Below, piece after piece: positions 40,775 through 42,073 of a stretch of 64,000 nucleotides of DNA. Position numbers and translations under genes: made by a program. The first letter of the stretch is position 1, and every line of letters begins with the position of its first letter. The notes beneath the pieces are model-generated. The model was not told the DNA's origin. It was given only the letters and a program-made list of their open reading frames with translations, and ran no database searches. The stretch lies in the sequence record PV745554.1; one strand, 5' to 3'.

Positions 40775-40863
40775 TGGAGCTACGGGAGGGACTCGAACCC
40801 TCATAGGTGTCGCCACCAGCAGAGATTTGCAGTCCCGCGCCTAACCTCTCGGACCACCGTAGC
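40775..40863 (-). tRNA. tRNA-Cys(GCA) with long variable arm, encoded CCA
   Basis: GCUACGG/CCGUAGC acceptor, U73, CU-GCA-AA loop, GGUG-GCGA-CACC arm, GAGGG-UUCGAGU-CCCUC. Confidence 0.9.
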
Positions 40864-41110
40864 AAAACGGGACTGACGCCCGAAGGCCCAGCCCCGTTCC
40901 CGACGACCCAAGGGAGTGCCGTAGCTGTCCCAAGGAGCACCGTGACGGCGTGGCAGGCGACTGAAGCCGTCAAGTCGAAGGGCTTCCGGCGCCGGTCACC
41001 CTAACCTCCGGGCTCTTGCGAGCGCGAGTGAGGTCCTCCTACGCCGATCCTTATAGCCGAGCCTTCACGCGTCCGCAACGAAAAATGTGTCGTGAGCGAT
41101 GACTTTTTCC

Positions 41111-41140
41111 TTGACACCTTCGATTAGGCTCTGGTAGAGA
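41111..41140 (+). promoter_or_regulatory. tmRNA operon promoter (TTGACA ... TAGAGA)
   Basis: -35 at 41111-41116; partial motif TGTCGTGAG just upstream. Confidence 0.6.
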
Positions 41141-41144
41141 ACAG

Positions 41145-41530
41145 GCATCGTTGTAATTCGGACAACGGAAACGGCGGCAAGACGGGGGTGCGATTCCCCC
41201 CGCCTCCACCACCACGAGCCCCTGGCGCTGGGAGTACGCGACTCCTGGGCAGGGAGTGTTACCCTGACGGACCATTGCTGGCCCGAGCCAAAGGTAGCCG
41301 GGGGTTCTTGATGCTGGGGGCGATCAGCTTCGATTGGCGCATGTGACTGGAAGACGCAACGGTGGGTGACCTCCAGGCCAGCTTGCTGGTGATCGGGTCG
41401 AAGCAACAGAAATGTCGCTGCAAATGACAACGCTCCGTTCGCGGTGCGTGAAGCCATCGCCGCCTAATAAGCGGTAGAGGCGTGTCCCGGCGGACGCGCG
41501 TGTCACAAAAAGGCCCTGCATCTACGGACC
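41145..41530 (+). ncRNA. ssrA: Two-piece (circularly permuted) tmRNA; tag ANDNAPFAVREAIAA; outer ends approximate
   Basis: Acceptor piece ending CGCCUCC-A-CCA (41201-41211) precedes 5' GGGGGCG (41316); G3.U70; tag ORF 41420-41470 ending TAA TAA. Confidence 0.92.
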
Positions 41531-41649
41531 GGGGCCAGTCCGCCACCCACCTTTCGCAGGCGGGGACCTAACTTCGGATGTCTGTCGGGCGATGGATGTT
41601 CACCTTGGGTCCCCGTCTTCGAAAGGTGGTCGAAAGACCGTCTAAAAGA

Positions 41650-41728
41650 CGCGGGGTAGAGGAGTCCGGTTGTCCTCGTCTGGCTCATAACCAGAAGATC
41701 AGGGGTTCAAATCCCCTTCCCGCTCCCA
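41650..41728 (+). tRNA. tRNA-Met(CAU), initiator-like
   Basis: C1 unpaired (C1/U72), UCUGG-CU-CAU-AA-CCAGA, AGGGG-UUCAAAU-CCCCU, CCA encoded. Confidence 0.88.
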
Positions 41729-41986: not shown

Positions 41987-42073
41987 GGTACGGTGGCTCG
42001 ACAGGTAAGGCATCGGCCTCATAAGCCGAGGGACTAGCTCCCGATCCTGGTTCAAATCCAGGTCGTACCTCCA
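41987..42073 (+). tRNA. tRNA(CAU) (Met or Ile2) with long variable arm and U73
   Basis: GGUACGG/UCGUACC, UCGGC-CU-CAU-AA-GCCGA, GGGA-CUAGC-UCCC arm, CCUGG-UUCAAAU-CCAGG, CCA. Confidence 0.88.

What the first reader, a model, noticed from the sequence alone, without database searches (positions are those of the whole stretch)
41145..41530. Phage-encoded two-piece tmRNA with its own degradation tag
The permuted order, G3.U70 Ala determinant and tag ANDNAPFAVREAIAA are visible. The Caulobacter host tag is ANDNFAEEFAVAA (recalled), so the ANDN start and terminal AA are kept while the middle differs, which could change adaptor (SspB) handling. Host tmRNA affects replication timing in Caulobacter (established), so a phage copy could rescue ribosomes after tRNA/mRNA cleavage defences or perturb the cell cycle (inference). 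No smpB is in this window.
Basis: partly seen in the sequence, partly recalled or inferred. Interest (0 to 1): 0.75.

Follow-up and report, generated by a model that had tools for sequence, protein, structure and literature searches.

The report
Phage two-piece tmRNA gene, unannotated
This Caulobacter jumbo phage really does carry its own split "ribosome-rescue" RNA (tmRNA) with a phage-specific degradation tag; such genes are already known in related phages, but this lineage's copy was missed by the usual detector and is absent from the database records.

Summary
The window is Caulobacter phage BL64/CcrRogue, a phiCbK-like jumbo phage. Rfam's permuted-tmRNA model hits 41149-41467 (+) at 88.5 bits (threshold 47, E 1e-15). 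The order is acceptor piece, a 104-nt intervening segment, then the coding piece. The G3:U70 pair, A73, an encoded CCA, the T-arm, the P2 helix, pseudoknot PK1 and a stop-codon hairpin are all present. They keep pairing through compensatory changes across 14 phages of five lineages. The tag reading frame is intact.

One correction: the resume codon is probably GUC (41414), so the encoded tag is VAANDNAPFAVREAIAA, not ANDN....

No phage of this group encodes SmpB, so the RNA must use host factors.

The kind is known. A 2022 ARAGORN survey lists seven relatives, and 107 of 120 IMG/VR loci I sampled carry permuted tmRNAs. The Rogue lineage falls just under ARAGORN's default threshold. It is unannotated in GenBank, where a spurious antisense CDS overlaps it.

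Details not found in the papers consulted:
- a Val resume codon in every phage lineage examined;
- a long branched intervening segment (81-118 nt, against 28-33 nt in hosts);
- an identical tag module on three different tmRNA backbones.

Function is untested. The most likely role is keeping trans-translation going during infection.

The parts
41110..41140 (+). Promoter-like element: CTTGACA (41110-41116), a 16-nt spacer, then GGTAGAGA (41133-41140). It resembles the Caulobacter housekeeping promoter type. The predicted start lies just before 41146-41149.
   Evidence: CTTGACA is invariant at -37/-38 from the RNA start in Poindexter-, Shapiro- and Colossusviruses (Bajun has TTGAC at -51), followed by G(C/G)TA(G/C)A. 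The generic sigma-70 scan did not call it. Use as a promoter is inferred.
41146..41211 (+). Acceptor piece: 5' strands of helix P2 (41146-41153, 41174-41180), T-arm (41184-41200), 3' acceptor strand (41201-41207), discriminator A73 (41208), encoded CCA (41209-41211).
   Evidence: Rfam alignment. The T-stem, acceptor stem and inner P2 pairs are 14/14 paired with up to 4 pair types per position. The 5' end is not mapped.
41212..41315 (+). Intervening segment, removed on maturation. It starts with a second CCA (41212-41214) and folds into a closing stem of at least 11 bp enclosing four hairpins.
   Evidence: RNAalifold on 8 phages: 38 pairs, 9 with compensatory double changes. The same closing-stem-plus-hairpins plan is seen in all phage lineages at 81-118 nt. 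Hosts have a 28-33 nt simple hairpin.
41316..41361 (+). Start of the coding piece: 5' acceptor strand GGGGGCG (G3 = 41318), D-loop-like AUCAGCUUCGA, and the 3' strands of P2 (41334-41340, 41357-41364).
   Evidence: The G:U pair is kept in 14/14 phages. Acceptor pair 5 switches from G:C to C:G in Bajun and CcrPW. The D-loop-like stretch is nearly identical to the host's (alignment).
41364..41400 (+). Pseudoknot PK1: S1 41364-66 with 41372-74; S2 41367-71 with 41396-41400. An extra hairpin (41377-41390) sits in the loop.
   Evidence: S2 is paired in 13-14 of 14 phages at four of its five positions (10 of 14 at the terminal pair) with AU<->GC and CG<->UG changes. The loop hairpin has up to 4 pair types. 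Rfam's own PK1 alignment was poor here.
41414..41470 (+). Tag reading frame: probable resume codon GUC 41414-41416; VAANDNAPFAVREAIAA to 41464; tandem stops TAA TAA 41465-41470.
Evidence: AAAU|GUC is invariant in 14 phages. Colossus/CcrPW read AAAU GUC AAC GAC AAC, colinear with host AAAU GCG AAC GAU AAC.
41459..41515 (+). 3' domain of the coding piece: stop-codon hairpin (41459-63 with 41471-75, stops in the loop), an 8-bp hairpin 41480-41499, and the tail GUGUCACAAAAAGGCC. The 3' end is approximate.
   Evidence: The hairpin shows a compensatory U:A to G:C change in IMG/VR locus L142. Shapiro- and Colossusviruses instead keep a host-like pseudoknot (GGCAACAGAAUCCC...).
41650..41728 (+). Initiator-like tRNA-Met(CAU) with a C1/U72 mismatch. 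It lies immediately downstream in every relative and is possibly co-transcribed.
   Evidence: No terminator-like site was found on the + strand between the two genes.

Best explanation
This is a functional, phage-encoded, circularly permuted ssrA gene.

Expression and processing (inferred). It is probably transcribed from a host-type promoter at about 41110-41140, possibly together with the two downstream tRNA-Met genes. By analogy with the host gene, tRNA-processing enzymes (RNase P at G1, 3' trimming after CCA) would cut out the structured 104-nt intervening segment. That leaves an acceptor piece of about 65 nt and a coding piece of about 200 nt, held together by the acceptor stem and helix P2.

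Action (inferred). The tRNA-like domain is nearly host-like: G3:U70, A73, CCA, the same T-loop and the same D-loop-like stretch. Host AlaRS, SmpB and EF-Tu should therefore accept it. The phage has no smpB of its own. On stalled ribosomes it would resume translation at GUC and append (A)VAANDNAPFAVREAIAA. This tag keeps the NDN motif and an aliphatic-Ala-Ala end but differs from the host tag in its middle and its length.

Most likely benefit (inferred). The gene keeps ribosome rescue and clearance of truncated proteins running through a long, translation-heavy infection, when host ssrA transcription may be shut off. In Caulobacter, host tmRNA is itself cell-cycle regulated by transcription and degradation (paper titles seen).

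What is shown: gene identity, structure, conservation, an intact in-frame tag, and absence of smpB. What is inferred: expression, processing, charging, tagging and the benefit.
For: - RF04321 scores 88.5 bits here and 69-90 bits in all 13 relatives tested.
- The T-stem, acceptor stem, inner P2 pairs and four of the five PK1 S2 pairs stay paired in 13-14 of 14 phages through compensatory changes.
- G3:U70 and ACCA are invariant.
- The tag frame is open in every lineage. Length differences are all multiples of three (15, 17, 20 or 21 codons), with NDN near the start and [ILV]AA-stop at the end.
- The stops sit in a conserved hairpin loop.
- CTTGACA is conserved upstream.
- The gene always sits next to an initiator-like tRNA-Met.
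- The T-loop GGGUGCGAUUCCC is the same as in 54 of 54 host genomes.
- No SmpB homologue is found in these phages.
Against: - There are no expression, processing or tagging data for any phage tmRNA of this group.
- The RNA is divergent. It fails the alpha-tmRNA model RF01849 (hosts score 209-245 bits) and falls below ARAGORN's default score.
- The middle P2 helix of the Rfam model is mostly unpaired.
- In this lineage a plain hairpin replaces the 3' pseudoknot.
- The host already has tmRNA, so the benefit could be small or conditional.
- SmpB supply could limit any gain.
Confidence: 0.6

Rival explanations
1. Specialised degron. The point of the gene is the different tag, not rescue capacity. 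The longer phage tag would change how tagged proteins are handed to ClpXP. For example, it could alter SspB-alpha binding or spacing, load or spare the protease, or be read by a phage factor. That could shift proteolysis-dependent host programmes, including the cell cycle, or recycle amino acids.
For: - Every phage lineage has a tag unlike the invariant host tag ANDNFAEEFAVAA, and longer by 2-8 residues.
- The same tag module is 57/57 identical between BL64 and the Brevundimonas phage Bajun, although the rest of the gene is 33-61% identical. It differs by one synonymous base on a third backbone (L142). This suggests the module is exchanged or strongly selected.
- The closest genus-mate, CcrBL10, has a different tag (68% identity in that segment).
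Against: - Tags still keep NDN and an aliphatic-AA end, which is what ordinary adaptor and ClpX recognition would need (this rests on my recollection of the E. coli and Caulobacter tag work; the papers were not available).
- Identity at synonymous sites could also reflect RNA-level constraint.
- No biochemical data exist.
Confidence: 0.15
2. Counter-defence. The gene pays off mainly when host defences or toxins cleave mRNAs or tRNAs and leave ribosomes stalled. Extra tmRNA then frees ribosomes for phage translation.
For: The idea is consistent with the neighbouring phage tRNAs and with a complete, chargeable tmRNA. Huge phages are reported to carry tmRNA and other translation factors (PMC7162821).
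Against: Nothing in the locus links it to a defence system. The flanking genes are a T5 A1-like/DNA transfer protein, a methylase and a cadherin-like protein. This is a special case of the main explanation rather than a distinct mechanism.
Confidence: 0.12
3. Inhibitor or decoy. The RNA titrates host SmpB (or AlaRS/EF-Tu) and dampens host trans-translation, as reported for the tRNA-like-domain-only molecule of mycobacteriophage DS6A.
For: The phage brings no SmpB of its own. A DS6A-type fragment inhibits tmRNA when expressed in E. coli (PMC4131195; PMC11915505).
Against: A decoy needs only the tRNA-like domain. Here PK1, the resume context, an in-frame tag with conserved ends and the stop-codon hairpin are all maintained across lineages.
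Confidence: 0.08
4. Inert relic. The region is a captured host ssrA fragment or attachment-site remnant that is drifting.
For: tmRNA 3' ends are common integration sites. One weak BLAST hit was to such a site in a Moorella phage. ARAGORN flags the gene as sub-threshold.
Against: The gene is complete, with both pieces. It is only distantly related to the host gene, is conserved in position and structure in five phage lineages with compensatory changes, and has no neighbouring integrase.
Confidence: 0.03

Closest known systems
Caulobacter crescentus (vibrioides) two-piece tmRNA, the host ssrA (Keiler, Shapiro & Williams 2000; Rfam RF01849/RF04321)
   Same: - Same permuted gene order.
- Same T-loop (GGGUGCGAUUCCC), G3:U70, A73 and encoded CCA.
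- Near-identical D-loop-like stretch.
- P2 helix and PK1 ahead of the tag.
- AAAU context before the resume codon.
- NDN near the tag start, aliphatic-Ala-Ala at its end, and the stop in a hairpin loop.
   Different: - Scores 88.5 against about 125 bits on RF04321 and fails RF01849 (hosts 209-245 bits).
- Resume codon GUC (Val) instead of GCG (Ala).
- Tag of 17 rather than 13 codons, with a different middle.
- Intervening segment of 104 nt, branched, against 28-33 nt.
- Extra hairpin inside PK1.
- 3' pseudoknot replaced by a hairpin.
- Acceptor pair 5 is G:C, not C:G.
- Different promoter and leader.
Permuted tmRNAs of other phiCbK-like phages (phiCbK, Karma, Magneto, Swift, CcrPW, CcrBL9, CcrSC; listed in Table S1 of Buchholz et al. 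2022, PMC9004378) and of Brevundimonas phage Bajun (annotated in GenBank ON529858)
   Same: Same genomic position next to tRNA-Met genes, same overall architecture, the invariant AAAU|GUC, a long structured intervening segment, and the ...REAIAA** tag end shared with Shapirovirus and Bajun.
   Different: - The Rogue/BL64/RBC8 copy carries the short APFAV tag module, identical to Bajun's and unlike its genus-mate CcrBL10.
- It has a tandem CCA-CCA.
- It falls below ARAGORN's default threshold, so it is absent from that survey and unannotated in its GenBank records.
Two-piece tmRNA of marine phage Melnitz and of pelagiphages (PMC9004378); tmRNAs of huge phages (PMC7162821); one-piece tmRNAs of mycobacteriophage Bxz1-like phages and Bacillus phage G (PMC4131195)
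   Same: Phage-borne tmRNA genes in large genomes that also carry tRNAs. The role is proposed but untested: maintaining the hijacked translation machinery or tagging proteins for degradation.
   Different: Melnitz's gene is reported to sit behind a glutamine riboswitch; Rfam reported no riboswitch family in this window. Some huge phages also encode SmpB, which this phage does not. The mycobacteriophage and phage G genes are one-piece.

Membership tests
Two-piece (circularly permuted) tmRNA | Significant match to a curated covariance model of the family | tested here: met
   RF04321 tmRNA_permuted scores 88.5 bits against a gathering score of 47, full length. All 13 relatives score 69-90 bits.
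Two-piece (circularly permuted) tmRNA | Permuted order: the T-arm, 3' acceptor strand and CCA lie upstream of the 5' acceptor strand and tag, separated by an intervening segment | tested here: met
   CCA ends at 41211 and G1 is at 41316, giving a 104-nt segment.
Two-piece (circularly permuted) tmRNA | tRNA-Ala-like acceptor: 7-bp stem with G3:U70, discriminator A73, CCA | tested here: met
   GGGGGCG pairs with CGCCUCC, followed by ACCA. The G:U pair is kept in 14/14 phages and pair 5 covaries.
Two-piece (circularly permuted) tmRNA | T-arm and D-loop-like element (the SmpB-binding elbow) | tested here: met
   A 5-bp T-stem with 4 pair types at its first position. The T-loop is identical to that of 54/54 hosts. 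AUCAGCUUCGA compares with host AUCAGCAUCGA.
Two-piece (circularly permuted) tmRNA | Long helix P2 joining the two pieces | tested here: met
   Outer and inner P2 pairs are kept with compensatory changes (for example CGUUG/CAACG against CGUCG/CGACG). The middle 4-bp helix of the Rfam model is mostly unpaired.
Two-piece (circularly permuted) tmRNA | Pseudoknot PK1 upstream of the resume codon | tested here: met
   Assigned by hand and then counted. S2 is paired in 13-14 of 14 phages at four of five positions (10 of 14 at the terminal pair) with covariation; S1 in 11-14 of 14. Rfam's own PK1 columns aligned poorly.
Two-piece (circularly permuted) tmRNA | Short tag reading frame with a G-starting resume codon, ending in hydrophobic-Ala-Ala and a stop inside a hairpin | tested here: met
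   GUC...AIAA TAA TAA. Indels among lineages are all in frame. The stop lies in the hairpin loop. The resume codon is inferred, not mapped.
Two-piece (circularly permuted) tmRNA | 3' pseudoknot (PK2) in the coding piece | tested here: not met
   Shapiro- and Colossusviruses keep a host-like GGCAACAGAAUCCC pseudoknot. The Rogue/BL10/Bajun/L142 type has an 8-bp hairpin with a 4-nt loop instead. This is not a strictly defining feature: from memory, the downstream pseudoknots of E. coli tmRNA are replaceable.
Two-piece (circularly permuted) tmRNA | Processing into two base-paired RNAs, charging with alanine, SmpB-dependent tagging | not testable with these tools
   Needs Northern blot or RNA-seq, an aminoacylation assay and mass spectrometry. 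No smpB is found in the phage, so host SmpB would be required.
Alphaproteobacterial tmRNA (Rfam RF01849) | Score at or above the family's gathering threshold (50 bits) | tested here: not met
   Not reported for the window at the gathering threshold or at E<=0.01. Hosts score 209-245 bits. Only three of the 13 relatives pass: CcrPW 66.8, Bajun 57.4, Colossus 53.5.

The most novel reading that the evidence does not exclude
The phiCbK-group phage tmRNAs may be a distinct, phage-adapted branch of two-piece tmRNA whose peculiarities are functional:
- a Val resume codon and longer, exchangeable tag modules that give phage-tagged proteins a different fate from host-tagged ones (different SspB/ClpXP handling, or recognition by a phage factor);
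- and/or a conserved, branched intervening segment of about 100 nt that survives excision as a separate small RNA or controls maturation timing.
Probability: 0.12. Interest if true: 0.7.

Novelty: new member of a known kind. Interest (0 to 1): 0.38.

Why it matters
Phage-borne tmRNAs are catalogued, but I found no functional test of a complete one in the papers I could search.

Caulobacter is a favourable place to test one:
- The host two-piece tmRNA, SmpB, SspB-alpha and ClpXP are well studied.
- Host tmRNA is cell-cycle regulated and affects replication timing.
- phiCbK-type phages are standard laboratory phages.

Practical points:
- The gene should be added to the CcrRogue, BL64, RBC8/11/63, CcrBL10 and CcrColossus records.
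- The antisense CDS BL64_127c should be removed.
- ARAGORN-only surveys undercount phage tmRNAs, whereas Rfam RF04321 finds them.

The Val resume codon, the long structured intervening segment and the shared tag module give concrete hypotheses to test.

Tried and rejected
- ARAGORN at default settings found no tmRNA in the window. This is a threshold effect: with -ps it is found, with the tag VAANDNAPFAVREAIAA.
- The Rfam alpha-tmRNA model (RF01849) gave no reportable hit. A weak beta-tmRNA alignment (38 bits, below threshold) was used only to locate the leader and the 3' hairpin.
- The generic sigma-70 and terminator scan found nothing useful at the gene. The promoter proposal rests on conservation instead.
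- A single-sequence MFE fold recovers the T-arm, acceptor stem and intervening-segment fold but misfolds P2. Its z-score is only -1.6, so it carries little weight.
- I could not obtain the primary papers on the Caulobacter tag and SspB-alpha, on host tmRNA processing, or the Wilson & Ely phage paper. Statements about SspB determinants are therefore from memory and marked as such.
- My first hand assignment of the PK1 loop hairpin used wrong coordinates. It was corrected.
- The minus-strand ORF annotated in BL64 was considered as an alternative reading. It was rejected because its frame is not kept even in the 95%-identical RBC8.
- A host-derived relic or att-site origin was rejected (see rivals).

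Full report
**What the window is.** The 1.2 kb around the finding is 100% identical to Caulobacter phage BL64 (PV745554) and 99.8% identical to CcrRogue (JX100814). Both are Poindextervirus rogue, a phiCbK-like jumbo siphophage of Caulobacter vibrioides. Neither record annotates an RNA here. CcrRogue shows an empty gap between tRNA-Cys and tRNA-Met. BL64 places a 'hypothetical protein' (BL64_127c) on the opposite strand.

- Rfam's permuted-tmRNA model RF04321 matches 41149-41467 (+) end to end at 88.5 bits (threshold 47, E 1.2e-15).
- Read off the sequence: T-arm 41184-41200; 3' acceptor strand CGCCUCC 41201-41207; A73; CCA 41209-41211.
- A 104-nt intervening segment follows. The 5' acceptor strand GGGGGCG then sits at 41316-41322, giving G3:U70.
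- Further on is a reading frame ending ...REAIAA TAA TAA at 41470.
ARAGORN gives ANDNFAEEFAVAA for five of six host genomes scanned, and 55 Caulobacterales genomes carry that coding sequence.
- ARAGORN at default settings is silent on the window. With its threshold lowered by 5% it calls a permuted tmRNA with the tag VAANDNAPFAVREAIAA.

**Is it a maintained gene rather than a relic?**
- I collected the homologous region from 13 other phages: RBC8, CcrBL10, BL57, phiCbK, Karma, Magneto, Swift, Colossus, CcrPW, RB23, CcrBL9, CcrSC and the Brevundimonas phage Bajun. RF04321 hits all of them at 69-90 bits.
- On a 14-sequence alignment, the acceptor stem, T-stem and inner P2 pairs are paired in 14 of 14 sequences. 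The first T-stem pair appears as G:C, A:U, U:A and C:G. Acceptor pair 5 flips from G:C to C:G in Bajun and CcrPW. P2 pairs switch between A:U, C:G, U:A and G:C.
- G3:U70 and ACCA never vary.
- I assigned PK1 by hand (S1 GGG/UCC, S2 UGACC/GGUCG). S2 is paired in 13-14 of 14 at four of its five positions (10 of 14 at the terminal pair), with A:U to G:C and C:G to U:G changes. Most lineages have an extra hairpin inside the PK1 loop.
- The stops lie in the loop of a small hairpin.
- The tag frame is open everywhere, and its length varies only in whole codons.
- This pattern is what selection on a working tmRNA produces. It rules out an inert fragment.

- All 14 phages have an invariant AAAU GUC just upstream.
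- In 55 host genomes the experimentally known resume codon GCG is preceded by CUAAAU, CUAACU or CUACCU. That means A at -4 and U at -1.
- Colossus and CcrPW read AAAU GUC AAC GAC AAC, exactly colinear with the host's AAAU GCG AAC GAU AAC.
The codon before it varies only at its third base (GCU/GCA/GCC), as a translated Ala codon would.
- So resumption at GUC (41414) is the best reading, and the encoded tag is VAANDNAPFAVREAIAA.
- Other lineages: Shapirovirus VA(A/D)NDNDVVAFASAREAIAA; CcrBL10 VASNDNDVVAYASAREAIAA; Colossus/CcrPW VNDNDAPVMEQ(L/R)LAA; Bertelyvirus VNA(A/S)NDNDVVVSTMTSVKLAA.
- All keep NDN and an aliphatic-Ala-Ala end. None matches the host tag.

**How it differs from the host gene.**
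- Host tmRNAs score 209-245 bits on the alpha-tmRNA model and 116-131 bits on RF04321. The phage RNA fails the alpha model.
- The intervening segment is 81-118 nt in every phage lineage but 28-33 nt in 54 host genomes.
- The phage segment is not a loose spacer. It folds into a closing stem of at least 11 bp that continues from the acceptor stem and encloses three or four hairpins. Of 38 predicted pairs, 9 show compensatory double changes among eight phages. The more distant lineages have the same plan with different sequence.
- In the Rogue/BL10/Bajun type, an 8-bp hairpin replaces the 3' pseudoknot. That hairpin shows a compensatory change in an IMG/VR relative.
- A conserved CTTGACA, a 16-nt spacer and G(C/G)TA(G/C)A lie 37-38 nt ahead of the RNA, in place of the host's leader.

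**A mosaic tag module.**
- Segment by segment, BL64 and Bajun are 33-61% identical over the promoter, acceptor piece, intervening segment and PK1. They are 57/57 identical over the tag frame and 80% identical over the 3' domain.
- BL64 and its genus-mate CcrBL10 are 77-100% identical everywhere except the tag frame, at 68%.
- An uncultivated viral contig (L142) with a third kind of tRNA-like domain carries the same tag with a single synonymous difference.
- Either the tag module moves between phage tmRNAs by recombination across the invariant flanks, or it is constrained at the RNA level as well. I cannot separate these two possibilities here.

**Partner protein.** A tblastn search with E. coli SmpB finds 68 phage records, none from Caulobacter or Brevundimonas phages. 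SmpB is conserved enough that a copy should have been seen, so the RNA must rely on host SmpB. The tRNA-like domain is close to the host's in the T-loop and the D-loop-like stretch, which fits that dependence.

**What is already known.**
- The 2012 genome paper stated that Rfam found no RNA other than tRNAs in these phages (PMC3556154).
- A 2022 ARAGORN survey of phage genomes lists permuted tmRNAs for CcrSC, CcrBL9, CcrPW, Swift, Karma, Magneto and phiCbK, but not for Rogue, CcrBL10 or Colossus (PMC9004378). Those three, with BL64 and RBC8, are the ones ARAGORN misses in my hands.
- A 2026 announcement counts zero and one tmRNA for two new phages of this group (PMC13459779).
- Only Bajun has the gene annotated among the records I looked at.
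- Phage tmRNAs in general are well documented, with proposed but untested roles (PMC4131195, PMC7162821, PMC9004378).
- A capped scan of IMG/VR with the 3' motif of the tRNA-like domain returned 120 loci. Of these, 107 have the permuted arrangement, most with an ARAGORN-called tag, and intervening segments of 24-176 nt.
- So the kind is common. This is a new, previously overlooked member with some lineage-specific traits.

**Most likely mechanism.** Shown: a complete, structurally conserved, chargeable-looking two-piece tmRNA gene with an intact tag, and no phage SmpB. Inferred:
- transcription from a host-type promoter, perhaps as one transcript with the two tRNA-Met genes (no + strand terminator was found);
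- excision of the intervening segment by tRNA-processing enzymes;
- charging by host AlaRS;
- SmpB-dependent entry into stalled ribosomes;
- tagging with the phage-specific degron.

The benefit I think most likely is keeping ribosome rescue going during infection. This fits the gene's place among phage tRNA genes. It also fits the fact that Caulobacter regulates its own tmRNA through the cell cycle by transcription and degradation (titles cited in PMC3985003). Rivals are a specialised-degron role, a counter-defence role, an SmpB decoy and an inert relic. The last two are disfavoured because the whole mRNA-like part is conserved.

**Verdict.** The finding is real and correctly interpreted, but it is not a new kind of thing. 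Interest is moderate. It offers a tractable system for the first functional test of a complete phage tmRNA, plus an annotation and detection gap and three descriptive details worth following: the Val resume codon, the structured intervening segment and the shared tag module.

Noticed in passing
window 40775-40863 (-) and 41987-42073 (+): tRNA-Cys(GCA), 89 nt, and the second tRNA-Met(CAU), 87 nt, both have long variable arms and 3-bp D stems. This is a class-II-like shape, unusual for Cys and Met tRNAs. Both occur at similar lengths in related phages where the gene is present. Whether they are charged as their anticodons suggest is open.
   Followed up: partly
window 41065-41406 (-): The CDS BL64_127c ('hypothetical protein') annotated in the BL64 record lies antisense to the tmRNA gene. 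Its reading frame is not kept even in the 95%-identical phage RBC8, so it is almost certainly a false gene call in GC-rich DNA.
   Followed up: yes
window 41208-41214: BL64/Rogue encodes ACCACCA (a tandem CCA) at the end of the acceptor piece, where RBC8, CcrBL10 and the Shapiroviruses have a single CCA. The Bertelyviruses also have the tandem form. The significance is unknown and it may be chance.
   Followed up: partly
window 41516-41649: The spacer between the tmRNA and the initiator-like tRNA-Met contains blocks conserved across genera. 41547-41556 (CCACCTTTCG) is perfectly complementary to 41620-41629 (CGAAAGGTGG). This could be a processing structure or another small RNA.
   Followed up: no
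window 41650-41728: The tRNA-Met directly after the tmRNA has a C1/U72 mismatch at the top of the acceptor stem (initiator-like) and follows the tmRNA in every relative examined. No + strand terminator separates them, which suggests one transcription unit.
   Followed up: partly
L142 (IMGVR_UViG_3300037350_000058), L106, L121, L174: Uncultivated viral contigs carry permuted tmRNAs with Val-starting tags. L142 has the same tag as this window on a different tRNA-like backbone with a 51-nt intervening segment. L106 comes from a 333-kb contig.
   Followed up: partly
L038 (Brevundimonas lutea) 2264-2628: ARAGORN at default settings also misses this bona fide host two-piece tmRNA (Rfam RF01849 209 bits). 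Its sensitivity gap for permuted tmRNAs is therefore not limited to phages.
   Followed up: no
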